Source of the DNA: Ylistrum balloti
Taxonomy: Eukaryota
DNA length: 64,000 nucleotides
Reading direction: 5' to 3'
Assembly: GCF_031769215.1 (NCBI RefSeq)
Contig: NW_026781958.1
Coordinates: 1,798,001 to 1,862,000, forward strand
Shown here: positions 1 through 64,000 of the stretch, in pieces
How positions within the stretch are numbered: the first letter of the stretch is position 1
Layout: each line of letters opens with the position of its first letter
Notes under the pieces: model-generated
Told to the model about the DNA's origin: nothing
What the model saw: the letters and a program-made list of their open reading frames with translations, nothing else
Databases searched by the model: none
Program-made: the position numbers and the translations under genes

Positions 1-2606
1 ACAAACAAAAAATGTGTAGTGTTTTACATTTGTCATCAATCATTATTAAATCTTCACATTGTTATTCGAGGGAAACACATAGCTAGCCTTCATAATTTGT
101 TTGTTTAGTAGTAAGCATTCTGTGAATGTTTTTAAGTGTAATATCTGTAAAGTATATATTTATAGCAAAGGAGATGCAGAATTTTGATTACTACCATCAG
201 TTACTGTCAATGTACAAATGTGTTGGGCCTGAAAACAATCCCAAAACACACCATTAGGCATGTTGAATGTATCTTTTTTATACACATAGTATTTCAATCT
301 ATTTCAATCAAACTATTTGTTTACAATCATCTTTATTCGTAAACTTGATCGAGAGAGTTGGGGCAGGATTTTGTAAAAATGAGACATTTGCAAGGACATG
401 TCAGAATTTAAAGAGAAAAAACTTTCCTAGGAAATTTTGAATAAAAAGTGAATGTATATATTTGTCTGATAGAGTCCATTGGGAATAGGTTTTTCAGTCC
501 ACTGAGATCCTGTTGATAAACATGTACCAGATGATGTGCAATATTATCGCTTGTTTGGTAAAACCAGAATTTTTACTTTTTTCTTTTCCATTTTTATTTA
601 GCTTTTGATTTATTTATTACCATAATCAAATTGTTTTTCTTGCCATAACATGTATTGTATCAGTCAATACAATCAAGGTTTGTTTTCTTATTATTTATAT
701 TGTATAGGACATTAATTGGGGTTTGAGTATGTAGTGTCAAGATATTTTTCTGTTTTGAATAGTTAAGAGACTAGGAAACTGGTTTGCTTTACATGTACTA
801 CACATTTAGGGCCCTATTTATATAAGCTGTTTAAATTTGGTGTATACGCACACACAAGATATTGACTGTATCTTATCATATTTAAGTGGTCTTAGGACTC
901 CCAGATTCGCTAGGTAAGATTGATCTGTGATAACAATTTACACAAAATACTGTAGTTAGGATTGGAGATGTCGGTATGGCTTAGAAAACTGAATTTATGT
1001 TGTAAATGATTATCAAAGAAATAGAACAATACAATCTGAACGTTTCTAAAATGATTGAAGATATGAGAGAATTTGAAATGTTTTAATCTCAATTCATGAT
1101 TAGCATATCTAAGGTTTACCTGATTCAGCAGTTTCTGTGAGACATACTGACAAAAATTGTATTTTTGTGGAATATAAATTTGATAGCTTTTCAAAAATTC
1201 TTACTTTTTGGTCACTTGTTTTTATAAATAAATGATACTTATGTGAAATTCACTTAAGATAAAACAAGTCATGAAATTCAAACAAATGCTGATGTTTTAT
1301 TTTAGCAGTTCATATATATAACATATGAATCCCTTGAGAAAGAGTGGATTAAAATGAAAATAAATCACCCACAAGGAATTGATAATTTTACAGTATGACT
1401 GACTATTGTATTAGTCACGGATAGGAAACTGGTTCTACAAGTGATATGTTTTAAACAGTGATCAAATTACCTTTTGAAAAGAATGCATAAAAGGCAGCTA
1501 GCAGTAGTGAATGTTACCTGTGTAGAGTACTGTGAAGCAAAATATTGTGTGTACCTGTAATGTAAGAAAAGTTCTTTGTGGCTTTTGGGTAGAACATAAT
1601 ATACTATTTATAGTAACATATCAATTGGTCATGATTCAAACAGTTCAAGCCAGTAAATCTCATAAAGATATATTTCAATGAATGCTTCCAAGTGCCATTT
1701 CATGTTTCAGTTCAGCATAACAAGAGCAAACATTTGTTTTCTGATCAAGTACGCCTCTAAACATCTGAAGTCTGGTTAGCTTTATGTGTAATTTTGTTTT
1801 ATTTATTTCCTTTTTTTTATTTTATTTTTATTTGTTCAAGCTTGCATGCCTTTCGATTAAAAGTGTCAGAATTTCTACATTCAACCAAGAATATATTGAA
1901 TAATTTAAGAATTCGTACAGGTTTGACTATATGACTGAGACTCATGAAGCCTGCCATGCTTTGTATAGAAATACATAGCAGATTCAATTGTGTTCTACAC
2001 AATAGAGTTCTGTTTAAAAGTTACAAATGTGTGAACATTGCTGTACAAAAAGTTAGATATTGAAACAAATTGACTTTGAATTTGAAATCAATTTTTATTA
2101 TGTAATCTAATCATTCCAGCAAGAATGCAAATCCTAATTGTGTTAATGAATGTGCCCATGATGGGATGTTTCAGATAAAACTTCCAACAGACTTAGTAAT
2201 GAGATTTTGTTTCTGGTGTAAAGGCAAATCATTCCAATGTAATGCGTGATCACATGAGATATCTGTATTGTAAAAAGGAATTATTTACAAGTGCACTTGA
2301 GCTGTATTTTACCCAAACATTTTGTTGTAGAGTAGTAGTTTATAAAAACAGGGTCCTCATATAGATGGATGAAAAATTTTTACAACGTATATTTCATTTT
2401 AAGAATCATCTTTGAATTAAAATTTCACAATTCATCTTTCATTAATTTTTTTCTTACATATATTATTATATTAATATTCAATAAAACAAGTTAAACTATC
2501 AAAATCGTTTTTATTTGTTTTGTTTAAAAACTATCTTTATATACATATACACAAACCATAGGTATTTATACAAGTGCCTCTGTTTAGTTTCATTGGTGCC
2601 TGTGTT

Positions 2607-3722
2607 GGACCTACAATGGCCCTGTTTACCAGGGACATTTACTTTCTTACCTGTTGTCAGTTACATCCCCTACAGTGGGCCTGTTACCAGGGACATGACC
2701 TTCCTTACATGTTGTCAGTTACATCCCCTACAGTGGGCCTGTTACCAGGGACATGACCTTCCTTACATGTTGTCAGTTACATCCCCTACAGTGGGCCTGT
2801 TACCAGGGACATGACCTTCCTTACATGTTGTCAGTTACATCCCCTACAGTGGCCTTGTTACCAGGGACATGACCTTCCTTACATGTTGTCAGTTACATCC
2901 CCTACAGTGGGCCTGTTACCAGGGACATGACCTTCCTTACCTGTTGTTAGTTACATCCCCTACAGTGCCCCTGTTACCACGGATGCAGCCTTTCTTTCTT
3001 GTTGTCAGTTACATCCCCTACAGTGGTCCTGTTACTAGGGACGCAGCCTTTCTTTCTTGTTGTCAGTTACATCCCCTACAGTGGTCCTGTTAACAGGAAC
3101 TCAGCCTTTCTTACCTGTTGTCAGTTACATCCCCTACAGTGGCCCTGTTATCAGGGACGCAGCCTTTCTTTCTTGTTGTCAGTTACATCCCCTACAGTGG
3201 TCCTGTTACCAGGAACGCAGCCTTTCTTACCTGTTGTCAGTTACATCCCCTACAGTGGCCCTGTTACCAGGGACGCAGCCTTTCTTTCTTGTTGTCAGTT
3301 ACATCCCCTACAGTGGTCCTGTTACCAGGAACGCAGCCTTTCTTTCCTGTTGTCAGTTACATCCCCTACAGTTGCCCTGTTACCAGGGACACAGCCTTTC
3401 TTTCTTGTTGTCAGTTACATCCCCTACGGTGGGTCTGTTACCATGGACATGGCCTTTCTTACCTGTTGTCAGTTACATCCCCTACAGTTGCCCTGTTACC
3501 AGGGACGCAGCCTTTCTTTCTTGTTGTCAGTTACATCCCCTACTGTGGTCCTGTTACCAGGAACACAGCCTTTCTTTCTTGTTGTCAGTTACATCCCCTA
3601 CAGTGACCTTGTTACCAGGGATGTGGCCGTCCTTACCTGTTGTCAGTTACATCCCTTACAGTGGGTCTGTTACTTGGAATACGGTCTTCAATACCTGTTG
3701 GCAGACACATCCCTTGCAGTAG
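2607..3722. repeat. 58-bp tandem repeat array (~19 copies)
   Basis: Unit TGTTGTCAGTTACATCCCCTACAGTGGGCCTGTTACCAGGGACATGACCTTCCTTACA; successive copies at 2652 and 2710. Confidence 0.95.
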
Positions 3723-3754
3723 CCTAGAAATGACCAAAAGGGTATCTAAAGACT

Positions 3755-5253
3755 AAATGACCTGACCATAAACAGGGTTTCTGAAGGATAAATAACGTGA
3801 CGATAAACAGGGTATCTGGAGGATAAATGACCTGACGATAAACAGGGTATCTGGAGGATAAATGACCTCACGATAAACAGGGTATCTGGAGGATAAATGA
3901 CCTGACGATAAACAGGGTTTCTGGAGGATAAATGATCTGACGATAAACAGGGTTTCTGGAGAGTTAATGGACTGAGAATAAACAGGGTTTCTGATGGAAA
4001 AATGACCTGACGATAAACAGGGTATCTGGAGAGTTCATGGACTGACAATAAACAGTTTATCTGGAGGATAAATGACCTGGCGATAAACAGGGTATCTTGG
4101 GGATAAATGACCTGACGATAAACAGGGTTTCTGAAGGATGATTGACCTGACGATAAACAGGTTATCTAGAGGATAAATGACCTGGCGATAAACAGGGTTT
4201 CTGGAGGATAAATGACCTGACGATAAACAGGGTATCTGGAGGATAAATGACCTGACGATAAACAGGGTATCTGGAGGATAAATGACCTCACGATAAACAG
4301 GGTATCTGGAGGATAAATGACCTCACGATAAACAGAGTATCTGGAGGATAAATGACGTGACGATAAACAAGGTATCTGGAGGATAAATGACCAGACGATA
4401 AACAGGTTATCTAGAGGATAAATGACCTGACGATAAACAGGGTTTCTGGAGGATAAATGACCTGACGATAAACAGGGTTTCTGGAGGAAAAATGACCTGA
4501 CGATAAACAGGGTATCTGGAGGATAAATGACCTGACGATAAACAGGGTATCTGGAGAGTTCATGGACTGACAATAAACAGTTTATCTGGAGGATAAATGA
4601 CCTGGCGATAAACAGGGTATCTTGGGGATAAATGACCTGACGATTAACAGGGTTTCTGAAGGATGATTGACCTGACGATAAACAGGGTATCTTGGTGATA
4701 AATGACCTGTCGATAAACAGAGTATCTAGAGGATAAATGACCTGACGATAAACAGGGTTTCTGGAGGATAAATGACCTGACGATAAACAGGTTATCTAGA
4801 GGATAAATGACCTGACGATAAACAGGGTTTCTGGAGGATAAATGACCTGACGATAAACAGAGTATCTGGAGGATAAATGACCTGACGATAAACAGGGTTT
4901 CTGGAGGATAAATAACGTGACGATAAACAGTTTATCTGGAGGATAAATGACCTGGCGATAAACAGGGTTTCTGGAGGATAAATGACCTGGCGATAAACAG
5001 GGTATCTTGGGGATAAATAACCTGACGATAAACAGAGTATCTAGAGAGTTCATGGACTGACAATAAACAGTTTATCTGGATGATAAATGACCTGGCGATA
5101 AACAGTTTATCTAAACAGAGTATCTAGGATGACTGACAATAAACAGTTTATCTGGATGATAAATGACCTGGCGATAAACAGGGTATCTTGGGGATAAATG
5201 ACCTGACGATAAACAGAGTATCTAGAGAGTTCATGGACTGACAATAAACAGGT
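3755..5253. repeat. 35-bp tandem repeat array (~43 copies)
   Basis: Unit CTGGAGGATAAATGACCTGACGATAAACAGGGTAT. A variant unit containing GAGTTCATGG occurs at 4031, 4556, 5046 and 5227. Confidence 0.95.
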
Positions 5254-6574: not shown

Positions 6575-7772
6575 TCCGAGTTTGGTGTATATTGTGGTGA
6601 GTTTGGTGTATATTGTGGTGAGTTTGGTGGAAGTTGTGGTGAATTTGCTGTATTTTGTGGCGAGGTTTGTGTATATTGTGGCGAGTTTGCTGTTTTTTCT
6701 GTGAGTTTGATTATATTGTGGCGAGTTTGCTATACTTTGTCCGAATATGCTGTATTTTGTGGCGAGTTTGGTGGAAATTGAGGCGAGTTTGGTGCATTTT
6801 GGGGCGTGTTTGGTGTGTTATGTGGCGAGTTTGGTGTATTATGTTGCGAGTTTGCTGTATTTTATGTGAGTTTGATGTATTTTGTGGCGTGTTTGCTGTA
6901 TTTTGTAGCGTGTTTGCTGTATTTTGTGGCGATTTTGCTCTTTTTTGTGCGAGTTTGCTGCGAGTTTGCTGTATTTTGTGGCAAGTTTGCTGTATTTTGT
7001 GGCGAGTATGCTGTATTTCATCCGAATTTGCTGTATTTTGTGGCGAGTTTGCTGTATTTTTGGCGAGTATGCTGTATTTTGTGGCGAGTATGCTGTATTT
7101 TATCCGAGTTTGCTGTATATTGTTGCGAGTTTGCTGTATTTTGTGGCGAGTTTGCTGTATATTGTTGCGAGTTTGCTGTATTTTGTGGCGAGTTTGCTGT
7201 ATTTTGTGGCGAGTATGCTGTATTTCATCCGAGTTTGTTGTATTTTGTGGCGAGTTTGCTGTATTTTGTGGCGAGTATGCTGTATTTTATCCGAGTTTGC
7301 TGTATATTGTTGCGAGTTTGCTGTATATTGTTGCGAGTTTGTGTATTTTGTGGCGAGTATGCTGTATTTTGTAGCGAGTTTGCGTATTTTGTGGCGAGTC
7401 TGCTGTATTTTGTGGCAAGTTTGCTGTATTTTGTGCGAGTTTGTTGTATTTTGTGGCGAGTTTGCTGTATTTTGTGCGAGTTTGTGTATTTTGTGGCGAG
7501 TTTGTGTATTTTGTGCGAGTTTGTGTATTTTGTGGTGAGTTTGCTGTATTTTGTGCGAGTTTGTTGTATTTTGTGGCGAGTTTGCTGTATTTTGTGGCAA
7601 GTTTGCTGTATTTTGTGGTGAGTTTGCTGTATTTTGAGACGAGTTTGGTGTATTATGTGCGAGTTTGTGTATTTTGTTGCGAGTTTGGTGTATTATGTGC
7701 GAGTTTGTGTATTTTGTTGCGAGTTTGGTGTATTATGTGGCGTATTTGCTGTATTTTGTGTTGAGTTTGGTG
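6575..7772. repeat. ~21-bp GT-rich tandem repeat array
   Basis: Unit GCGAGTTTGCTGTATTTTGTG, with 19-21 bp variants. Confidence 0.95.
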
Positions 7773-16589: not shown

Positions 16590-19410
16590 CGACAACCGAC
16601 ACGTGACAACTCTCTTCACCCTGATATGTGACAACCCATCACATTAAGTCGCGCGACAACCCCTTTCATAACGAAATGAGACAACCCACAGCATTCTGAA
16701 AGTAGGAGACCACAATCACTTCACCCTACGAGTCAAAACGCCAAACCCTGGCACGTGACAATCAACCATATTCCGACATGTGAGACATCCCCACCCCAAC
16801 CCACCTCAACCCACGTGACACATCGACACGTGACAACGTACAACATTCAACACATGTGACAACCCCTTTCAATCCGACATGTGGCAATCCCAATCATTCA
16901 GACATGTGACAGACACTCCCTAACCTTCCCAACACCCCAACAAATGAGACAACTCTCTACACCCCAACATGTGACAAAGATAATCATCAACATTTTGACA
17001 TTTGACAGACCACAACCACTCCACCCCACGAGACAAAACTCTTAACCCCGACACGTGACAATTAACCACATCCAGACATGTGAAAGACCACAACCACTCC
17101 ACCCCACGAGACAAAACTCTTAACCCCGACACGTGACAATCAACAACATTCTGACATGTGACAGACCACATCCACTCCACCCCACTAGACAAAACTCTTA
17201 AACCAGACACGTGACAATCAGCCACATTCTGACATGTGACAGACCACAACCACTCCACCCCACTAGACAAAACTCTTAACCCCGACACGTGACAATCAAC
17301 AACATCCAGACATGTGACAGACCACAACCACTCCACCCCACTAAACAAAACTCTTAACCCCGACACGTGACAATCAACAACATTCTGACATGTGACAGAC
17401 CACATCCACTCCACCCCACTAGACAAAACTCTTAAACCAGACACGTGACAATCAGCCACATTCTGACATGTGACAGACCACAACCACTCCACCCCACTAG
17501 ACAAAACTATTAACCCCGACACGTGACAATCAACAACATTCAGACATGTGACAGACCACAACCACTCCCCTCACGAGACTAAACTCTTAAACCCGACACG
17601 TGACAATTAACAACATTCTGACATGTGACAGACCACAACCACTCCACCCCACTAGACAAAACTCTTAAACCCGACACGTGACAATCAACAACATTCTGAC
17701 ATGTGACAGACCACAAACACTCCTTCCCACTAGACCAAACTCTTAAACCGGACACGTGACAATCAACAACATTCTGACATGTGACAGACCAAAACCACTC
17801 CACCCCACGAGACAAAACTCTTAACCCCGACACGTGACAATCAACAACATTCAGACATGTGACAGACCACAACCACTCCCCTCACGAGACTAAACTCTTA
17901 AACCCGACACGTGACAATCAACAACATTCTGACATGTGACAGACCACAACCACTCCTTCCCACTAGACAAAACTCTTAAACCCGACACGTGACAATCAAC
18001 AACATTCAGACATGTGACAGACCACAACCACTCCCCTCACGAGACTAAACTCTTAAACCCGACACGTGACAATCAACAACATTCTGACATGTGACAGACC
18101 ACAACCACTCCTTCCCACTAGACAAAACTCTTAAACCCGACACGTGACAATCAACAACATTCTGACATGTGACAGACCAAAACCACTCCACCCCACGAGA
18201 CAAAACTCTTAACCCCGACACGTGACAATCAACAACATTCAGACATGTGACAGACCACAACCACTCCACCCCACTAGACAAAACTCTTAAACCGGACACG
18301 TGACAATCAACAACATTCTGACATGTGACAGACCACAAACACTCCACCCAACTAGACAAAACTCTTAAACCGGACACGTGACAATCAACCACATCCAGAC
18401 ATGTGACAGACCACAACCACTCCACCCCACTAGACAAAACTCTTAACCCCGACACGTGACAATCAACCACATTCTGACATGTGACAGACCACAACCACTC
18501 CACCCTACTAGACAAAACTCTTAAACCCGACACGTGACAATCAACAACATTCTGACATGTGACAGACCACAACCACTGCACCCCACTAGACAAAACTCTT
18601 AAACCGGACACGTGACAATCAACAACATTCTGACATGTGACAGACCAAAACCACTCCACCCCACGAGTGTTACAATCAACCACATTCTGACATGTGACAG
18701 ACCACAACCACTCCCCTCACGAGACTAAACTCTTAAACCCGACACGTGACAATCAACAACATTCTGACATGTGACAGACCACAACCACTGCACCCCACTA
18801 GACAAAACTCTTAAACCGGACACGTGACAATCAACAACATTCTGACATGTGACAGACCAAAACCACTCCACCCCACGAGACAAAACTCTTAACCCCGGCA
18901 CGTTACAATCAACCACATTCTGACATGTGACAGACCACAACCACTCCACCCCACGAGACAAAACTCTTAAACCGGACACGTGACAATCAACCACATTCTG
19001 ACATGTGACAGACCACAACCACTCCACCCAACTAGACAAAACTCTTAAACCGGACACGTGACAATCAACCACATTCTGACATGTGACAGACCACAACCAC
19101 TCCACCCTACTAGACAAAACTCTTAAACCGGACACGTGACAATCAACAACATTCTGACATGTGACAGACCACAACCACTCCATCCCACTAGATAAAACTC
19201 TTAACCCCGACACGTGACAATCAACCACATTCTGACATGTGACAGACCACAACCACTCCACCCCACTAGACAAAACTCTTAACCCCGACACGTGACGATG
19301 TACAACATTCAGAGATGTGAAATATCTCTACCCCATCCTTGTCCACCCCTACACTCCAACACATGGCAACTCTCCACATCCCGACACGTAACGACCTGCT
19401 ACATTCAGAC
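16590..19410. repeat. 78-bp tandem repeat array (~30 core copies, 16985-19320) with degenerate flanks
   Basis: Unit ACATGTGACAGACCACAACCACTCCACCCCACTAGACAAAACTCTTAACCCCGACACGTGACAATCAACAACATTCTG. Confidence 0.95.
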
Positions 19411-26613: not shown

Positions 26614-27362
26614 GTTGTCCTTTCCCCGCTGTCAATGCTGTACCCACCCCTTGTCCTTTAGTTGTCCTTTCCACGCTGTCAATGCTGTACCCATCCCCTC
26701 GTCTTTTTGTTGCCCTTTCCCCGCTGTCAATGCTGTACCCACCCCTTGTCCTTTAGTTGTCCTTTCCCCACTGTCAATGCTGTACCTATCCCTTGTCCTT
26801 TAGTTGTCCTTTCCCCACTGTCAATGCTGTACCCACGCTGTAGCTGTCAATGCTGTACCCACCCCTTGTCCTTTTGTTGTCCGTTCCCCGCTGTCAATGC
26901 TGTACCTACCCCTTGTCCTTTAGTTTTCCTTTCCCCACTGTCAATGCTGTACCCATCCCCTCGTCTTTTTGTTGCCCTTTCCCCGCTGTCAATGCTGTAC
27001 CCATCCCCTCGTCTTTTTGTTGCCCTTTCTCCGCTGTCAATGCTGTACCCACCCCTTGTCCTTTAGTTGTCCTTTCTCCGCTGTCAATGCTGTACCCACC
27101 CCTTGTCAATGTGTTGTCCTTTCCCCGCTGTCAATGCTGTACCCACCCCTTGTCCATTAGTTGTCCTTTCCCCGCTGTCAATGCTCTACCCACCCCCTTG
27201 TCCTTTAGTTGTCCTTTCCCTGCTGTCAATGCTGTACCCACCCCCTTGTCCTTTCGTTGTCCTTTCCCTGCTGTCAATGCTGTACCCACCCCCTTGTCCT
27301 TTAGTTGTCCTTTCCCTGCTGTCAATGCTGTACCCACCCCCTTGTCCTTTCGTTGTCCTTAT
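26614..27362. repeat. 47/48-bp pyrimidine-rich tandem repeat (~16 copies)
   Basis: Unit GTTGTCCTTTCCCCGCTGTCAATGCTGTACCCACCCCTTGTCCTTTA (copies at 26614 and 26661). Confidence 0.95.
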
Positions 27363-27774
27363 TTCTCTGCCAATAACGAGTCATCTTACCGGTTTCCTGT
27401 TGTCTAATTACCAGATGATGAACACTCTGAGCTCACTGTTACCTACCCCTTCTCCTCTCCCGATGTTAAAACCGTCGTATTTGCATATTTATTGTACTCT
27501 TTTTCCTCCCTGGGAGATCCTTTCTCTCTATTACTAGATAAACCACCCATACTCATACTTTCTTGTCATGTCTTTCTTGATATTGGTGACCCGGTCCTTT
27601 GCAAACCCTTCCACTTAATTCTATGTCAATCGTCATCTCTGGGAAACGTTATGCTACCCTTTTCCCTCACTACACCTTCTCACTTAATGTTATACTCTGT
27701 GACATCTGTTACCCTCTCCTTTCAACACATCCTTACACCTAGTTCTATGTCAATTACCCACTCAATGTGACATT

Positions 27775-56594: not shown

Positions 56595-58582
56595 TTACTC
56601 CGCTGTGTTATTCTGTCGGACGAAGCAGCACAACAGGTTTCTACGGATCCAGTCTTTCCTGTTGTTGACCTTGGATGAACGTGTCGTCTGCTCGCCGACT
56701 GAGGCGCCACTGCTGCCACCTATTGGACATAGAATGAACGATATCAGAAAACAAGAGGATGAATAAAACGACACATTTAACACTAAACATTATATATCAA
56801 ATAAACTGACTATTTAAAAAAGATTTTTCGAAAATCAAGTTAGCACAAACTTGTGTTTTTCGTTTTTCTTAAATTGGATGTCGCGATTGACCTTCCTGTA
56901 TTACTACTGCGAACAGTTGGAAATTTTTGTTTTTGTTCTTGTTCTTTTTTTTATTTCAATTCGAATCAGAAGCTATCAGGTCAGAAATTGTCTGTTTTTT
57001 CCTCTGTATTTCTGATTTTCCCGCACAGTTATTGTCTATAAGCGACTTAAATTGATGGAAAAACTTTCAGTTATGCTTTCGTCTGCTTTTGTTTTGTTTT
57101 TCGAAACACTTCATAAACTCAGAGTTCTAAACTTAAAGCCATTAAAACTAGATATATTCTCACCTTCTGTACCAGTGACTGCTTTCTTTACTTCTTTATT
57201 GTCTCTCTATTAAAAAATAGAAACAGTGTAATGTAGTAACCAGGTAATGACAATGCTAAAACATAACCATTTTTAATATCCCCGCTTTCACCGAAACGGG
57301 GGATATTGAATTGGGTTCGTCCGTCTGTCTGTCACACTTTCGTTTCCGTGTTTTCACTTCCCCAAATATTATACAATTTGGGTGAAACGTGGTCAGCAGA
57401 TGCATCTTGGGGTCATTAAGACTGAGTTTGACTATCAGTGTCATCTGTTAATAATTATGCATACTAATAAAGTATCCTTTGATTTCATTGGTCAATATGC
57501 TTGTTATTATCGTTTCATCCATTTTCCATTCCTACTTTTTTTCCCGTGAAAGAACATCTTATTTTCATTGAAATGATCATGTGTAACTTTGACAGTACTC
57601 GATTGAGTATATCAAATAATAAGCCAATATATGGTCATGTTTCAGCCACAGATTCGATAATGTTCTAACACGTGTTCACAAAGGTGATGGTAAGCTTACC
57701 TTCAGTAGTCTGTCTAACAGTCCTCCCAATATATTCTTTTTGTCGGAAGTCTGGCTCAACTGCCGTGTAGTCACGGGCTCGTTAGCTGTTTAACAAGAAT
57801 ACGAATTAGGTATCTGATAAAGTTATTCGTATACATTTATTAAGATAAATTCAGACAATACAGTTACGATTAGATGATCCAGGATTCATTCCGTGAAAGT
57901 ATATGGTAGTTCTAGGACGATTTATTTATTCATCTCAATTAATTGTTCATTATGAGAGAGTCTGGCTAGTAATGCCGTATACGAAATAATGATAGGTGTT
58001 TCTGAAATACCTTGGACGATGTCAGGGGCTGCAATTCGAACCTGATTGTCACTTCCGCTTCCTGTCACTTCTTGCTTGCTTCCTGCGTCACTAAATGCCG
58101 GTGAATTACTTCCTAATGTGACAGTTGTTACTTCCGGTGTTGTTTTGAGCAGTTCTTCCATCTTATTATCAGTAGGCGATGTTTGACCTTCGCGGATGGC
58201 GGTCACCGATTGTCCAATGGTCAACTCTACAACATCATTTCCTTCCTTATCAACGTGTCCTGACCATTACTTCATCTTATCATCTGTTGGGGAAGTTCTA
58301 CCATCGCGTATGGCGGTAATTGACTTTCCAATGGTCAACTCTACAACATCATTTCCTTCCTTATCAACGTGTCCTGACCATTCCTTCATCTTATCATCTG
58401 TTGGGGAAGATCTACCATCGCGTATTGCGGTAATTGACTTTCCAATGGTCAGTTTCACAATATCATCCACCCCTTGGTCAAGATCTTCGGCCATTACCTC
58501 TGTAAAGATTTTAGTCCATTGCATTGTCTATTGCAGTATTAGTCAAATTCCGCGCTATACTGTGCAGTTGTTCATCATCCAT
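56595..58582 (-). pseudogene. Left paralog: 4-exon gene for an unrecognised AKAP-like protein (274 aa if repaired), apparently disrupted
   Basis: Exons 58582-58011, 57785-57700, 57206-57164 and 56719-56595, with GT-AG sites and compatible phases. An extra base at 58513 creates TAA after codon 23, and a GAA>TAA nonsense lies at 58267-58269. Confidence 0.75.
57271..57499 (+). mobile_element. Helentron/HINE (pearl/DINE-1-like) fragment in intron 2 of the left paralog
   Basis: Absent from the right-arm intron. Starts in a T-run, with hairpin AATATCCCCG-CTTTCACCGAAA-CGGGGGATATT (57275-57307) followed by (GTCY)n at 57318-57333. Confidence 0.55.
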
Positions 58583-60345
58583 GGTGTAATCTGAAGTAAC
58601 AGTTCGTGATGTCGAAGTTTGGTCTGTACAAATTTTGTAATTATTCCACAAATGTCGAGACATAGATATTGATTAATAAACGACGACTACGCTGTTAAAT
58701 GTAACAGTCCAAACAGATTCATAATTCCAGGAAGAAAAGACAAATGTTGAAAGACGTACCGATATCAGACAGTCGATCTATGCAATATCTGTTTTAAATC
58801 TCATTGGTGCGAACAGACTGGTTAAAACCCAACTTTAAAATGAATGTAAATAACTTTATTATAACAATATCTTACAACAGAAATGCATTTATTCTCAATT
58901 TGATTCAACATATCTTTTATCTTTTGCTAGATTTGAACATTCCTGTCCCTATACAATGATAATATTAGAAATTCTCCGTCCAAAAATTAAAGATCCTCAC
59001 TTCGAACTCAAAAAACTAATTCTCTTCTGCCACGAAAGGTTCTATCTTTCCTAAATAACACCATAAAATTTGGTACAGATGAAGTATCTAGGTGCGTTTC
59101 ATTAAAACACAAAATATTTAATTAATTTGTGATGTTTTTCAATATGTTCCAATTTATTACATTATTTAGAAAATTCCTGGTATTTAAATGAAATATAGTC
59201 AGTGCATTATCTGAGGGGCCGAGATTTGTGGCTACCTCTATGATCAATATCAATAAAATTAATATCGAAATATGATCAAAACATTTGCGCCCCACAGAAT
59301 ATATTCATAGAAGAATTGTTCCATATCAGCATGGTTAACATAAAATTTAATTCAATCCCTGTATATTATACGTTCGAGTTTAAAGAGTTGGTCCATAAAC
59401 TGTTGTGGAAATTTCCGATTGAAGCCAAATAACAGACAGGCCACCTATTACACATCATTAAAAGTAGTACATTTTTTATCGATAATTTTGATTGAATTGC
59501 ATTTTATTGAAATTCTGATTCTGTCGATGTCGACAGTGTTTAATTATTGTCGCAGAATCCTTCCGCCCCCACCCCCGCCCCCGCACCCAAACCCCAAAAA
59601 GTTATCTTAAAACCACATGTTGACTCCACAAACAAATTTGATAATGTTAAGTTCGTTTACAATGTAACAAAATATAAAAAAGACGTGTAAATAAGGTTAA
59701 CAACATGAAAAAGCTTTCGAGGGAATTATTTTATGATTACGTCGGTGATATCGTTTACAAACTTGACACAATAAATAAAATTTGGAATAAATTCTTTTCT
59801 GTTACAAAATACTGTTGCATTAAACTATTTACATTTCATTTAAAAGTTGGGATTTTAACCAATCTGTTCGCACTAATGAGATTTAAAACAGATATTGCAT
59901 AGATCGACTGTCTGATATCGGTACGTCTTTCAACATTTGTCTTTTCTTCCTGGAATTATGAATCAGTTTGGACTGTTACATTTAACAGTGTAGTCGTCGT
60001 TTATTAATCAATATCTATGTCTTGACATTTGTGGAATAATTACAGAATTTGTACAGACCAAACTTCGACATCACGAACTGTTACTTCAGATTACACCATG
60101 GATGATGAACAATTGCACAGTATAGCGCGGAATTTGACGAATACTGCAATCGACAAAATCTTTACAAAGGAAATGGACGGAGATCTTGACCAAGGGGTAG
60201 ATGATGTTGTGAAACTGACCATTGGAAAGTCAATTGGCCGATCGACAACGCAAAAAATAAAAGCGAACGGTTTCGTGTCGTGGTCGTACTTTCCACGAGT
60301 GTCCTTCCAAACAAGAGACGATTATACAGTTGAAATTAGTACCCA

Positions 60346-60449
60346 TGTTTCCCAAGTCAGCGGAAGAATGACAAACCTCATATACCGGTGTTGTCTGTCA
60401 ACACAACATCTAAACGGGTCGAGGAATCCCACTGTACATGTCAGATAGG
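60346..60449 (+). pseudogene. SWIM zinc-finger relic (start of a SWIM/YqaJ-type transposon ORF)
   Basis: CFPSQRKNDKPHIPVLSVNTTSKRVEESHCTCQIG followed by a GG|GTATGC donor; the upstream part is in another frame. Confidence 0.6.
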
Positions 60450-61027
60450 GTATGCTTTTGTTCTGCAATATTATGTGTATGTTGTATTTGTTCTGTACCA
60501 TCTTTTGGTTGAATAATAATCACAATAATAAATATAACTAGATAACAACACTATTATACAACACCCATTCTGGAGTTTTGTCGTACATGATAATAATAAT
60601 TTTACCGACCCGAGTTAGCCTGTTGTAATGCTTAAAAAAGGTCTATTATTGTTATTAGGTCTTTTTACTATTTATTACGCTATATATACATAATAAATTT
60701 GTCAACAACGTATCATCACCATCCTCATTTTAGGAGCATTTGTGTTTAATGGTATGTGACAACTATTTCATTATCAAAGGCAATTAGGATGAATGAATTA
60801 TATTTTTAATAATAAATCGTTTTTGAAGATTATTTGTCAATAAATCATAGTATATGTATCAAGTGTGTAAATTCTGATACCTTGAACTATATATAAGTGA
60901 AAAATAAAAAGAATATGGCCATATAAGGTCTTTGAAATTTTGAGTAAAATGTTACACAAATTTGCACCTGATCTTGGCTGAGGCAATATCTTTTAGTACT
61001 AAAAAATTACTTAATTCACATCAACAG

Positions 61028-61105
61028 TGGGCTTTTGTCCCCATGGGCTTTTGTCCTATGGGCTTTTGTCCTAGTGGGCTTTTTTCCTAGTGGGCTTTTG
61101 TTCTA
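61028..61105. repeat. Five copies of a 15-16-bp unit inside the transposon
   Basis: TGGGCTTTTGTCCYA starting at 61028, 61044, 61059, 61075 and 61091. Confidence 0.9.
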
Positions 61106-61263
61106 CAATGTTGAATCCGTTTATGTTTTTTTTCCTCTTTACATTTTTGCTAATAATTAAAAAGATATATATATATATATATAAAAAAAAAAACAAAGTT
61201 CAAGTGGTGTGATAGTTTTCTATGGAGCAGAATTAATGAAATAAAAATAAAAACAGTCGCCAT

Positions 61264-61413
61264 GCAGGGTTAGCTCAGTTGGTAGAGCATAGACTCCACG
61301 ACCAGAGTGGGTTCGAATCCCGGCAGCAGCAATTTCTTTCCCGTGAAAATTCACCTCTCGCCACTGTTTCAAGTGGGAATGAAGTGGTAAACCCCAAAGA
61401 AACAAACAAAACA
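61264..61413 (+). mobile_element. Short tRNA-derived SINE nested in the transposon
   Basis: A-box TAGCTCAGTTGGTAGAGC (61271-61288), B-box GGTTCGAATCCC (61310-61321), and tail TAAACCCCAAAGAAACAAACAAAAC; it cannot fold into a full cloverleaf. Confidence 0.7.
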
Positions 61414-61889
61414 AGTTTGCTTTTACAGTCATATAAAGTCTTTATAAAATGGCCACCAAGATACATCACTGATATAATGGTTACTTCCTAAACTGGCATT
61501 AAATTCTTAAAAATATTTTTTTTATGTATATCATGTTAATGTTTTTTTTCATCAAGAATATTAATACCTTATTGGAAGACTTTAAAATTTTATTTCAACT
61601 GTTAAACCATAACAGTAAACACTCATATTATCACAGACCATTCACAAAGTAAAACTTTGTAAAAGAGCAGAAACACGTCCAGATAATTTCATTTCCCTTC
61701 AGTCAATAAATATCCGAAAATGGTCAGTCCGAAATCAAGCTTGTTGATAAGTACACACATTAACATGCGGCCTATTAACACATGAGAGAGGATTATAAAA
61801 CTTATGCTAGCAAAATTTTGAGTGAAAAAAAAAGAAATACTGATGTTCATTGAAATATTGTACACGTGAATCTGTGAATATTTATGTAC

Positions 61890-62105
61890 TTTTGAGCAGA
61901 CATAAAAATGCTTTAGTCTAGAAGGACACCGCAGGATCTCCACGTTAAGTTGATACTTAGGCCATCCGCACAATTGGAGCCAAGATTTTCAATTCTCAGG
62001 CTTCGTCTGTGGTTTGGGAAACGATATGAACACAACACCTCCTTCCAATCGCTCTGGGTAGCGAGAATCGGTGTTGCAAGTTCCCCAGCAGCAGCGTTTC
62101 ACCAT
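61890..62105 (-). pseudogene. THAP zinc-finger relic (5' exon of the transposase)
   Basis: MVKRCCWGTCNTDSRYPERLEGGVVFISFPKPQTKPEN*KSWLQLCGWPKYQLNVEILRCPSRLKHFYVCSK: C-x4-C, FP, W and VCS match the THAP pattern, with an in-frame TGA at 61989-61991. Confidence 0.8.
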
Positions 62106-64000
62106 TGTCGCAGTATGTCGGAGTAACGAAACGTAAACAAAGAGGCAAATACTACCCGCGATCTGATTGGCTAAACCGCGCTGACAATCTAAAGCTGTCG
62201 ATCGGCCAATTAGCGCCATACGCGATGGTAGAACTTCCCAAACCGATAATAAGATGAAGGACTGGTCAGAACATTTTGATAAGGAAGGAAATGATGTTGC
62301 AGAGATGACCATTGGACAATCGGTGACCGCCATCCGCGAAGGTCAAACATCGCCTACTGATAATAAGATAGAAGAACTGCTCAAAACAACACCGGAAGTA
62401 ACAACTGTCACATTAGGAAGTAATTCATCGGCATTTAGTGACGCAGGAAGCAAGCAAGAAGTGACAGGAAGCGGAAGTGACAATCAGGTTCGAATTGCAG
62501 CCCCTGACATCGTCCAAGGTATTTCAGAAACACCTATCATTATTTCGTATACGGCATTACTAGCCACTCTCTCATAATGAACAATTAATTGAATAAATAA
62601 ATCGTCCTAGAACTACCATATACTTTCACGGAATGAATCCTGGATCATCTAATCGTAACTGTATTGTCTGAATTTATCTTAATAAATGTATACGAATAAC
62701 TTTACCAGATATCTAATTCGTATTCTTGTTGTAAAACAGTTAACGAACCCGTGACAACACATCAGTTGAGAGAGACTTCCGACAAAAAGAACATATTGGG
62801 ACGACTGTTACACAGACTACTGAAGGTAAGCTTACCATCACCATTGTGAACACGTGTAAGACCATTCTGGAATCTGTGGCTGAAACATTACCACACAATC
62901 TTGTACTGTCAAAGCTACACATGATAACTTCAGTGAAAAGAAGAAGTTCTTTCATATGTAAAAACAGGAATGGAAAACGGATATACATATATGATCACCA
63001 ATTTCAACCGAATTCTTCATTATACCTCTGAAAAAAATGAGAACGATGATAATAAAGATAGTTATATTCAGCATTGTCATTACCTGGTTACTACATTACA
63101 CTGTTTCTATTTTTTAATAGAGAGACAATAAAGAAGTACAGAAAGCAGTCACTGGTACAGAAGGTGAGAACAGTATCTACTTTGTATGTCTTTCTGTCTA
63201 GAACTCTGTCGATGATATGTTCCGAAAAAAAATCCATTCCCACCCCAAAGCATACAAGAAGGTCACTCACGATATCCAATTTAAGGAAAGCGAGATGGAG
63301 AAGTTTGTGCTAACTTGTTTTTCCAATAGTCTTATTTCCACAGGCAATTTATTTGATATGTCATGTTTTAATGTTATATGTGTCGTTTTGATAATCCTCT
63401 TGTTTTCTGAAATCGTGCATTCTATGTCCAATAGGTGGCAGCAGTGGCGCCTCAGTCGGCAAGCAGACGTCACGTCCATCCAAGGCAGCAAACAACAAGA
63501 AAGGCTGGATCCGTAGAAACCTGTTGTGCTGCCTCGTCCGACAGAAGAACACAGCGTGTGAACATGAAAAGAAAGAAATTGTTAGGAATGCTGTTCTGAA
63601 AATACTTTTAAACTTACTTTTCCGTTCAGACTAATTTTGTTTTTCAAAATCGATTGCAGGGATAAATTCATTATAGGGGCATGTCAGGGCAAGTATTTAT
63701 CCATGGCAATAAACACAATATCCGGAAGCCTAAGACATTTTTTTTTGCACTGAAATACAGACGAGAAATTAATTTTCGGATCCAATGATAAATTGTAAAA
63801 ACATGATACCCATTTGGCATTTTAATTTAACAGAATGTAAAGTAACTTAATGTAAAAGTACGATTTAAAAATACACAACATTTAAAAATAGAAACGTCAC
63901 ATGTTAATAACACAGGGTTGTCTGAAGATAGCATGCGGCGAATAGAACCTCAAAATGGCCCTAGTTGTCCTCTTAGGGACTTGGCACGAACACGCGCGGT

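What the first reader, a model, noticed from the sequence alone, without database searches (positions are those of the whole stretch)
58011..58582. Unrecognised protein with several tandem AKAP-type (PKA-anchoring) helices
Seen: the N-terminus MDDEQLHSIARNLTNTAIDNAMDKIF is followed by 38-aa repeats containing VDDIVKLTIGKSITAI / NDVVELTIGKSITAI (three here, two in the right copy), then an acidic Ser/Thr-rich linker. Known: PKA R-subunit-binding helices place small or hydrophobic residues at positions 1, 4, 5, 8, 9, 12, 13 and 16, e.g. AKAP7 [24 protein letters not shown] and AKAP79 ASSLVKNAIQLSIEQL. The first helix parallels AKAP7 and the repeats parallel AKAP79, each with Thr at one core position. 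Inference: a lineage-specific multivalent AKAP whose valency varies by repeat number.
Basis: partly seen in the sequence, partly recalled or inferred. Interest (0 to 1): 0.75.

Follow-up and report, generated by a model that had tools for sequence, protein, structure and literature searches.

The report
Broken scallop gene with AKAP-like helix
The stretch is the first exon of a disabled copy of a small gene family found only in scallops; its N-terminal helix really looks like the helices that anchor protein kinase A, but the 38-residue repeats do not, and no binding has been tested.

Summary
Window 58011-58582 (minus strand) is exactly coding exon 1 of a four-exon gene, with three 114-nt (38-aa) tandem repeats. 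A head-to-head duplicate starting at 60098 has two repeats.

Both copies are broken:
- Left: an extra base at 58513 and a TAA at 58267-58269.
- Right: a 12-nt deletion and a 1,972-bp transposon in repeat 1.

Contigs from other individuals suggest about 4-5 further paralogs without the frameshift.

Intact relatives (158-323 aa, 1-4 repeats) occur only in scallops (Ylistrum, Mizuhopecten, Argopecten, Pecten), all annotated "uncharacterized". There are 11 hits in 1.84 billion proteins and no Pfam family.

AlphaFold2 gives a confident N-terminal helix (pLDDT about 90), lower-confidence repeat helices, a disordered linker and a C-terminal helix over a polybasic LLCCF tail.

The N-terminal helix is AKAP-like by a published motif, by hydrophobic periodicity (88-92 degrees, as in AKAP7 and AKAP-IS) and by in-register similarity. 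The only PDB match of one member is the AKAP7 helix, but at E=0.21, and two other members do not repeat it. The repeats peak at about 122 degrees and mostly fail the motif.

Verdict: a pseudogene copy of a scallop-only family of probable membrane-tethered adaptors. Single-helix PKA anchoring is plausible (about 0.3); multivalent anchoring is unlikely (about 0.08). Another note in this scan (s1-258888) proposes an AKAP-like protein elsewhere in this genome; I did not test it.

The parts
58011..58582 (-). Left copy, coding exon 1: ATG at 58582, GT donor after 58011. It encodes the N-terminal helix, three 38-aa repeats and a Ser/Thr-rich acidic linker. This is the finding itself.
   Evidence: 91% identity to P0001 residues 1-23 and 55% to residues 24-180 by tblastn
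58504..58576 (-). Codons for the N-terminal amphipathic AKAP-like helix (DEQLHSIARNLTNTAIDNAMD-KIF), interrupted by the extra base at 58513.
   Evidence: (the helix in near-identical P0001 covers residues 3-31, pLDDT 91-92)
58513..58513 (-). One extra base (T on the coding strand) that shifts the frame after ...NAMD. In four runs of other individuals it is carried only at about single-copy depth, so it appears real for this copy. Most depth lacks it, which points to paralogs.
   Evidence: (left out 1: 61.4 of 72.5 depth in X1)
58159..58500 (-). Three tandem 114-nt units (38 aa each): 58387-58500, 58273-58386 and 58159-58272.
58267..58269 (-). In-frame TAA (KMK*WSG) at the junction of repeats 2 and 3. 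The same position in the unit before reads GAA (E).
57700..57785 (-). Left copy, exon 2 (86 nt): ...TTRQLSQTSDKKNILGGLLDRLLK, a basic amphipathic helix, with an AG acceptor and a GTAAGC donor.
57164..57206 (-). Left copy, exon 3 (43 nt): RDNKEVKKAVTGTE, with AG and GTGAGA splice sites.
56595..56719 (-). Left copy, last exon: GSSGASVGEQTTRSSKVNNRKDWIRRNLLCCFVRQNNTAE plus the stop codon. This is the polybasic stretch with Trp and a Cys-Cys pair (probable palmitoylated membrane tail).
   Evidence: with the N-terminal helix and the repeats, one of the well conserved parts of the family
58583..58830 (.). Upstream region shared by the two head-to-head copies (inverted repeat with 59850-60097, 97% complementary). 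Presumed 5'UTR and promoter.
   Evidence: I2; the role is inferred
60098..60235 (+). Right copy, exon 1, first part: MDDEQLHSIARNLTNTAID-KIFTKE...KLTIGKSI. It lacks 12 nt (NAMD) within the helix.
60236..62207 (.). A 1,972-bp DNA transposon inserted into repeat 1 of the right copy. It has perfect 12-bp terminal inverted repeats (GGCCGATCGACA) and a 4-bp target-site duplication AATT (60232-60235 and 62208-62211). Contig depth is 6-4000 by bin (mostly far above the single-copy 14), so it is high-copy.
62208..62518 (+). Right copy, exon 1, second part: the rest of repeat 1, repeat 2 and the linker, up to the GT donor.
62740..62825 (+). Right copy, exon 2 (KKNILGRLLHRLLK).
63121..63163 (+). Right copy, exon 3 (RDNKEVQKAVTGTE).
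63435..63634 (+). Right copy, last exon (…KKGWIRRNLLCCLVRQ…). The frame runs on past the left copy's stop position to 63632-63634.

Best explanation
The finding is coding exon 1 of a disabled copy of a gene family found only in scallops (Pectinidae). The copy is one arm of a head-to-head inverted duplication, and both arms are broken.

Intact family members are small (158-323 aa), have no signal peptide and are largely disordered. Their parts, in order:
1. A conserved 22-28-residue N-terminal amphipathic helix.
2. One to four 38-aa units: a helix (V-D-D-I-V-x-L-T-I-G-R-S-I-x-A-I-R), then G-x-T-S-P-T-D-x-K-M.
3. A disordered Ser/Thr-rich acidic linker.
4. A basic amphipathic helix (KKNVLGRLLDRILKRDKKE).
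5. A polybasic tail ending in DWIRRNLLCCFVRQ.

Most likely mechanism (inferred, not shown): the tail ties the protein to a membrane through its basic residues and palmitoylation of the Cys-Cys pair. The helices then act as docking sites for partner proteins, which makes this a membrane-tethered adaptor.

The best candidate partner of the N-terminal helix is a RIIa-type docking/dimerisation four-helix bundle, either a PKA regulatory subunit or another protein with that domain. That would be AKAP-like anchoring through one helix. I put this at about 0.3. The repeats are a different helix type with another, unknown partner or a phospho-regulated role (conserved S/T-P).

Shown: gene structure, lesions, family distribution, predicted helices, pattern similarity. 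Inferred: membrane anchoring, adaptor role, PKA docking.
For: Gene and family:
- The four exons have canonical splice sites and are present in both copies.
- Homologues P0001-P0014 come from four scallop genera. Only 11 proteins score E<=0.001 in 1.84e9.
- Several Mizuhopecten paralogs lie on one scaffold.
- Contig L002 joins the repeat region to the tail without introns, as a spliced transcript or processed copy would.

Pseudogene state:
- Extra base at 58513, TAA at 58267-58269, and a transposon with TIRs and a target-site duplication in the right copy.

Structure:
- AlphaFold2 on P0003 and P0001 gives an N-terminal helix at pLDDT 83-92, repeat helices at 53-74, a linker below 50, a C-terminal helix at 54-70, and pTM 0.21-0.22.
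- The ESM Atlas model of P0010 has pTM 0.19.

AKAP-likeness of the N-terminal helix:
- The motif is met in registers 6, 10 and 14 in all seven Mizuhopecten proteins and in P0010. Shuffles reach this in at most 0.3% of trials.
- The moment maximum lies at 88-92 degrees with magnitude 0.48-0.66, against 92 degrees and 0.56-0.62 for AKAP7 and AKAP-IS.
- The best ungapped AKAP-IS or AKAP7 match is always at residues 5 or 2. It reaches 9/17 and 10/26 identities in P0010, with 0/2000 shuffles as good.
- The only PDB hit of P0010:1-30 is the AKAP7 RII-binding helix of 4ZP3, in register.
- Core positions 6, 9, 10, 13, 14, 17, 18, 21, 22 and 25 stay hydrophobic or small across genera, while the positions between them vary.
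Against: - No binding data of any kind.
- No Pfam AKAP model matches.
- The AKAP7 hit has E=0.21. P0001 and P0004 N-termini hit SNAP-25, L21 and PUF3 at E 0.5-1.9, and the family N-terminal profile hits designed helical proteins. So sequence similarity is not significant.
- By my own estimate (not from a tool), the triple-register motif has a chance rate of about 2e-5 per residue, or a few hundred chance cases per proteome.
- A 90-degree periodicity is not unique to AKAP helices: the basic exon-2 helix also peaks at 90-94 degrees.
- P0014 and the L002 product lack the N-terminal helix, so it is not essential to the family.
- The window/P0001 version has Thr and Asn in and next to the core and fails the strict motif.
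- Palmitoylation is inferred from the LLCCF motif and neighbouring basic residues only.
- No RNA run was found for this species.
Confidence: 0.45

Rival explanations
1. The family is a scallop-only, fast-evolving disordered protein whose helices have nothing to do with PKA. The N-terminal helix and the repeats mediate self-association, membrane-surface binding or docking to some other partner. The resemblance to AKAP helices is the coincidence expected for a small-and-large-residue amphipathic helix.
For: - Non-significant PDB E-values that differ between members.
- No Pfam AKAP hit.
- The motif has low information content (own estimate).
- Some members lack the N-terminal helix, while the repeats and tail are kept.
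- The exon-2 helix shows the same 90-degree periodicity.
Against: - The AKAP7 and AKAP-IS match falls in the same register in every member that has the helix, across four genera. It reaches 9/17 identity to AKAP-IS in P0010.
- The hydrophobic pairs keep a strict four-residue spacing over about 20 residues, unlike heptad coiled coils.
- The helix has an acidic or neutral polar face, so it is not a typical membrane-binding helix.
Confidence: 0.4
2. One reading: a multivalent AKAP in which the N-terminal helix and every 38-aa repeat each bind an R-subunit dimer, so that repeat number sets the valency.
For: - Unit positions 1, 4, 5, 8, 9, 12, 13 and 16 are V, I, V, T, I, S, I, I and are conserved.
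- Position 10 is Gly, Lys, Glu or Gln, as an exposed helix position would be.
- AlphaFold2 predicts the units as helices.
- A few units with Ala instead of Thr pass the strict motif: P0004 at 40, P0011 at 119, P0015 at 8 and 46.
- Repeat number varies from 1 to 4.
Against: - The units' hydrophobic moment peaks at 122-124 degrees. At 90 degrees it is only 0.25-0.32, against 0.56-0.61 for real AKAP helices.
- About 4 of 35 units pass the motif.
- Units are never the best match to AKAP-IS or AKAP7. Where the N-terminal helix is missing (P0014), the best match lies in a unit but is at chance level: 751/2000 and 588/2000 shuffles do as well.
- The unit profile does not detect the N-terminal helix; only the linker is shared.
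- pLDDT is only 53-74, and Gly sits in 25 of 32 units.
Confidence: 0.08
3. Not a gene at all: a chance ORF in a minisatellite or a transposon-borne fragment.
For: - The window is rich in tandem satellites that create long spurious ORFs.
- The frame here is interrupted.
- Transposons sit in and next to the locus.
Against: - Intact annotated homologues in four genera share the same four-exon layout and splice sites.
- Conservation is patterned by codon and residue class.
- An intron-less contig, L002, exists.
Confidence: 0.03

Closest known systems
AKAP7 / AKAP18 short isoforms (RII-binding helix solved in PDB 4ZP3)
   Same: Both are small proteins that combine one amphipathic helix with an LCCF-type dicysteine lipid-anchor motif. 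The lipid anchor of AKAP18-alpha is from my own knowledge. The helices align in register, [24 protein letters not shown] against DDEQLRxIAQLLVKxVIEKAVDKI, with up to 10/26 identities, and both have a moment peak at about 92 degrees.
   Different: There is no significant sequence relationship: E=0.21 for one member only, and no PF10470 hit. The order is reversed, with the helix N-terminal and the anchor C-terminal. The scallop proteins also carry 38-aa repeats and a basic helix that AKAP7 lacks. Convergence is more likely than homology.
AKAP-IS / Ht31-type consensus RII-binding peptides
   Same: P0010 residues 5-21 (HIEQIAKTLVTNAVQKA) share 9 of 17 residues with AKAP-IS (QIEYLAKQIVDNAIQQA), and every core position is conservatively matched. 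The AKAP-IS sequence was confirmed in the literature.
   Different: AKAP-IS is a designed peptide. The window's own helix has Thr at a core position and scores much lower (4/17 identities in the near-identical P0001).
AKAP79/AKAP5 and smAKAP (membrane-tethered AKAPs)
   Same: The architecture is similar: a disordered scaffold with polybasic and acylated membrane targeting plus one docking helix. AKAPs are defined by a 14-18-residue amphipathic helix (PMC12083921).
   Different: No WSK-motif or other Pfam match. There is no F/Y-A start of the helix, which marks RI-selective anchors (PMC12083921). According to PMC12083921, most AKAPs arose in vertebrates, so a scallop-only one would be an independent invention.
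Uncharacterized Pectinidae proteins such as LOC132543573 (Ylistrum balloti), LOC110455444 (Mizuhopecten yessoensis), LOC117322832 (Pecten maximus) and XP_069114227 (Argopecten irradians)
   Same: True homologues. They share the N-terminal helix, the 38-aa units, the linker, the basic helix and the LLCCF tail, and the same exon layout. The Ylistrum locus is about 85% identical in DNA, introns included.
   Different: Those are intact open reading frames with 1-4 repeats. The window's two copies are interrupted.

Membership tests
Pectinidae MDDEQL / LTIGRS-repeat / LLCCF family (unnamed, all 'uncharacterized protein') | Significant full-length sequence similarity to the other members | tested here: met
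   The window pieces hit P0001 at E 6.7e-40. tblastn of P0001, P0002, P0003, P0005 and P0008 maps all four exons in both copies. The family profile finds only these proteins.
Pectinidae MDDEQL / LTIGRS-repeat / LLCCF family (unnamed, all 'uncharacterized protein') | Intact open reading frame (functional member) | tested here: not met
   Left copy: extra base at 58513 and TAA at 58267-58269. Right copy: 1,972-bp transposon and a 12-nt deletion.
AKAP (functional class) | A 14-18-residue amphipathic helix with hydrophobic or small residues at positions 1, 4, 5, 8, 9, 12, 13 and 16 | tested here: met
   N-terminal helix only: AlphaFold2 pLDDT about 90, the motif in three registers in most members, and a moment peak at 88-92 degrees. 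The window/P0001 version fails the strict motif because of Thr. The repeats mostly fail.
AKAP (functional class) | Direct binding of that helix to the docking/dimerisation domain of PKA RI or RII, abolished by proline substitution or Ht31 | not testable with these tools
AKAP (functional class) | A targeting element that places the complex at a defined site | tested here: inconclusive
   The tail is conserved, polybasic and carries Trp and a Cys-Cys pair, and it is predicted helical. Palmitoylation and membrane binding are inferred only.
AKAP7 family (Pfam AKAP7_RIRII_bdg) and Pfam RII_binding_1 | Match to the Pfam model | tested here: not met
   No such hit at E<=10 for the window pieces, for P0001, for P0001:1-45 or for any of the 16 family members. 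HMMER's filters drop very weak matches, so this excludes only a recognisable match.
AKAP79/AKAP5 | WSK motifs or sequence similarity to the AKAP79 helix in the repeats | tested here: not met
   No Pfam hit. The repeat segment of P0004 finds only unrelated PDB chains. The periodicity of the repeats differs from AKAP helices.

The most novel reading that the evidence does not exclude
Scallops have invented their own family of lipid-anchored, multivalent A-kinase (or RIIa-domain protein) anchoring proteins. In this reading the N-terminal helix and each 38-aa unit recruit a docking-domain dimer. Valency (1-4 or more) would then be tuned by gain and loss of tandem repeats and by gene duplication, with S/T-P phosphorylation next to each helix switching binding.
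Probability: 0.08. Interest if true: 0.7.

Novelty: new member of a known kind. Interest (0 to 1): 0.4.

Why it matters
AKAPs are defined by function, not by sequence. According to the 2025 evolutionary survey (PMC12083921), nearly all of them arose in vertebrates, and very few are known from invertebrates.

A scallop-only, membrane-tethered protein family whose conserved N-terminal helix matches the RII-binding consensus would be a cheap, direct test of whether PKA anchoring has been invented independently in molluscs. Scallops use cAMP/PKA in catch muscle, cilia and sperm (own knowledge).

The locus in this window is itself only a pair of decaying copies. It does show how the family turns over, through inverted duplication, change in repeat number, transposon hits and point lesions.

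Tried and rejected
- Beta-hairpin reading of the repeats. The alternating V-E-L-T-I-G pattern and weak Pfam BBS2_N hits (E 0.006-0.05) suggested it. I dropped it because AlphaFold2 predicts helices in two members, and the Gly position is replaced by Lys, Glu or Gln in other members.\n- Repeats as diverged copies of the N-terminal helix. A unit HMM matches only the shared linker (MEEMxxxLD), not the helix.\n- GoLoco, WH2 and calmodulin-type motifs for the units. I considered these from memory; none has Pfam support.\n- THAP domain in the transposon ORF at 61989-62123 (seen by eye). Pfam does not confirm it.\n- ESM Atlas: no usable feature hit, and all structure matches have TM<=0.30.\n- Literature search for the LOC identifiers and for the SRA run of L002: nothing.\n- Expression: the only run search returned DNA holders, no RNA, so expression in this species stays open.\n- fold search was not run, because models with pTM 0.21 would give meaningless matches.\n- The published AKAP motif could not be found in the held papers. 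It is quoted from my own knowledge (Hundsrucker et al. 2010).
Full report
**1. What is at the coordinates**

The window is eukaryotic, AT-rich and full of satellites. An earlier follow-up in this scan and my own homology results both place it in a scallop.

On the minus strand, 58582 is the ATG and 58011 is the last base before a CAAG|GTATTT donor.

It encodes these parts in order:
- MDDEQLHSIARNLTNTAIDNAMD.
- After one extra base at 58513: KIFTEVMAEDLDQG.
- Three 38-aa units.
- A Ser/Thr-rich acidic linker.

The tandem array is real:
- Tandem Repeats Finder reports period 114, 2.6 copies, 90% matches and score 467.
- The repeat finder reports three in-register copies.

The frame is broken twice: by the extra base at 58513, and by a TAA at 58267-58269 where the preceding unit has GAA.

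**2. Gene structure and the second copy**

tblastn with intact homologues, followed by inspection of splice sites, gives four coding exons.

| Exon | Left copy (minus) | Right copy (plus) |
|---|---|---|
| 1 | 58582-58011 | 60098-60235 and 62208-62518 |
| 2 | 57785-57700 | 62740-62825 |
| 3 | 57206-57164 | 63121-63163 |
| 4 | 56719-56595 | 63435-63634 |

- The locus is a head-to-head inverted duplication, roughly 56.2-58.8 kb against 59.85-63.9 kb. Its arms are 72-99% complementary, and the longest arms reach 96-99%.
- The right copy lacks 12 nt (NAMD) inside the N-terminal helix.
- A 1,972-bp element (60236-62207) splits the first unit of the right copy. It has perfect 12-bp terminal inverted repeats GGCCGATCGACA and an AATT target-site duplication.
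- By contig depth that element is highly repeated in the genome.

**3. Are the lesions real?**

The five runs that hold the stretch turned out to be genomic DNA, and I laid the contigs of four of them (X1, X2, X3, X5). Their contigs cover the unique spacer 58776-59904 at even depth (about 14 in X1).

- At 58513 most depth lacks the extra base (61.4 of 72.5 in X1, similar in the others).
- A contig at about single-copy depth (11.1) keeps the extra base.
- Exon depth is 2.5-4 times the spacer depth.

I read this as follows. The frameshift belongs to this copy and is not an assembly slip. About 4-5 further paralogs elsewhere in the genome are open at that point.

The repeat array itself is not bridged by the contigs, so the TAA could not be checked.

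**4. Relatives**

- The word-index search with the right-copy piece found one protein: LOC132543573 of Ylistrum balloti (P0001, 197 aa, intact, two units).
- Searching with P0001 added a second Ylistrum protein and seven from Mizuhopecten yessoensis.
- A profile search of all 1.84 billion representatives found 11 proteins at E<=0.001. It added Pecten maximus, Argopecten irradians, a third Ylistrum protein and one unnamed Logan contig.
- All are annotated "uncharacterized". Nothing outside Pectinidae was found.
- The Ylistrum locus is about 85% identical to the window in DNA, introns included.
- Pfam gives nothing above noise for any member.
- Whole-protein PDB sequence search gives nothing.
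- Unit number is 1 (P0008, P0009, P0013), 2 (most members), 3 (P0010, P0011, P0012 and the window's left copy) or 4 (P0002).
- Contig L002 joins the repeat region to the tail without introns, as a spliced transcript or processed copy would, and it carries frameshifts.

**5. Architecture and fold**

AlphaFold2 on P0003 and on P0001 gives the following. P0001 differs from the window protein at 2 of the first 57 residues.

| Region | Prediction | pLDDT |
|---|---|---|
| N-terminal helix, from residue 3 to about 31 | helix | 83-92 |
| 38-aa units | helices | 53-74 |
| Linker | unstructured | below 50 |
| Polybasic DWIRRNLLCCFVRQ tail | helix | 54-70 |

- pTM is 0.21-0.22, so there is no globular fold.
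- The ESM Atlas model of P0010 agrees (pTM 0.19).
- There is no signal peptide or membrane-spanning segment.
- The tail is one of the well conserved parts, together with the N-terminal helix and the repeats.
- A Cys-Cys pair flanked by basic residues and Trp is the usual look of a palmitoylated membrane anchor. This is my own knowledge and an inference.

**6. The AKAP question: N-terminal helix**

- Hydrophobic or small residues occupy positions 6, 9, 10, 13, 14, 17, 18, 21, 22 and 25 in all genera, while the positions between them vary.
- The published AKAP pattern (quoted from my own knowledge) is met in three consecutive registers in all Mizuhopecten members and in P0010, in two registers in P0002, and in one each in P0011 and P0012.
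- Own-composition shuffles reach this in at most 0.3% of trials.
- The hydrophobic moment peaks at 88-92 degrees with size 0.48-0.66. The AKAP7 helix of 4ZP3 and AKAP-IS peak at 92 degrees with 0.56-0.62.
- The best ungapped match of either reference helix within each whole protein always falls at the N-terminus in one register.
- That match reaches 9/17 identities with AKAP-IS and 10/26 with AKAP7 in P0010. Between 0 and 58 of 2000 shuffles did as well in the members whose helix starts at residue 2-5.
- A PDB search with P0010:1-30 returns a single chain out of 177,635: the AKAP7 RII-binding peptide, aligned over the binding helix.

Against this:
- That hit has E=0.21.
- The same search with P0001 and P0004 returns SNAP-25, ribosomal L21 and PUF3 at E 0.5-1.9.
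- The family's N-terminal profile returns designed helical proteins.
- The motif is expected by chance a few hundred times per proteome (my estimate).
- The window/P0001 version has Thr in the core and fails the strict pattern.
- Two members lack the helix altogether.

**7. The AKAP question: the repeats**

The unit consensus is V-D-D-I-V-x-L-T-I-G-R-S-I-T-A-I-R-D/E-G-Q-T-S-P-T-D-x-K-M. Ser12 is invariant, and Ser22 and Pro23 are nearly invariant.

- However, Leu7 and Ala15 are also conserved, so the hydrophobic moment peaks at 122-124 degrees and is only 0.25-0.32 at 90 degrees.
- About 4 of 35 units pass the strict pattern.
- Units are never the best match to a reference AKAP helix. Where the N-terminal helix is missing, the best match lies in a unit but is at chance level.
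- A unit HMM does not recognise the N-terminal helix.

So the units are a different helix type. I consider multivalent PKA anchoring unlikely.

**8. Conclusion**

- The locus itself is a pair of pseudogenes.
- The most likely role of intact members is a membrane-tethered adaptor. PKA or RIIa-domain docking through the N-terminal helix is a testable hypothesis at roughly 0.3.
- According to PMC12083921, AKAP diversification is mainly a vertebrate event, so a positive test would be of moderate interest.

Noticed in passing
window 60236-62207: A non-autonomous-looking DNA transposon of 1,972 bp with perfect 12-bp terminal inverted repeats GGCCGATCGACA and a 4-bp AATT target-site duplication. It carries an internal 16-nt tandem repeat (61026-61105). 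Contig depth is 6-4000 by bin (mostly far above the single-copy 14). An ORF on the minus strand (about 61989-62123, MVKRCCWGTCNTDSRYPE...) looked THAP-like by eye, but Pfam did not confirm it.
   Followed up: partly
window 57250-57650: A very high-copy repeat (contig depth 400-4200 against 14) lies inside intron 2 of the left copy. Some contigs skip 374 nt here (57257 to 57632), and the right copy is shorter at this place. This is probably a SINE or MITE insertion that differs between copies or alleles.
   Followed up: no
window 2999-4573, 6655-7621, 16920-19291, 26662-27537: Long tandem satellite or minisatellite blocks with strong GC skew. They produce spurious ORFs of 130-270 aa in several frames.
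   Followed up: no
L001 10529-10717 (Ylistrum balloti): The Ylistrum locus keeps a region 88% identical to the window's exon 2, yet the annotated 197-aa product P0001 skips it and joins exon 1 directly to the last exon, which is in frame. This may be alternative splicing that removes the basic helix, or an annotation gap.
   Followed up: partly
L002 (Logan contig SRR19746223_12985): An intron-less relative of the Argopecten-type member P0014. It lacks the N-terminal helix and has frameshifts between the repeat region and the LLCCLVRQ tail. It is either a transcript of a decaying copy or a processed pseudogene; the organism is not known.
   Followed up: partly
P0012 residues 9-45 (Pecten maximus): The N-terminal helix is partly duplicated (EIAKLSVTK followed by EIATRFVINAILKAMENV), so the helix itself can also change by internal duplication.
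   Followed up: no
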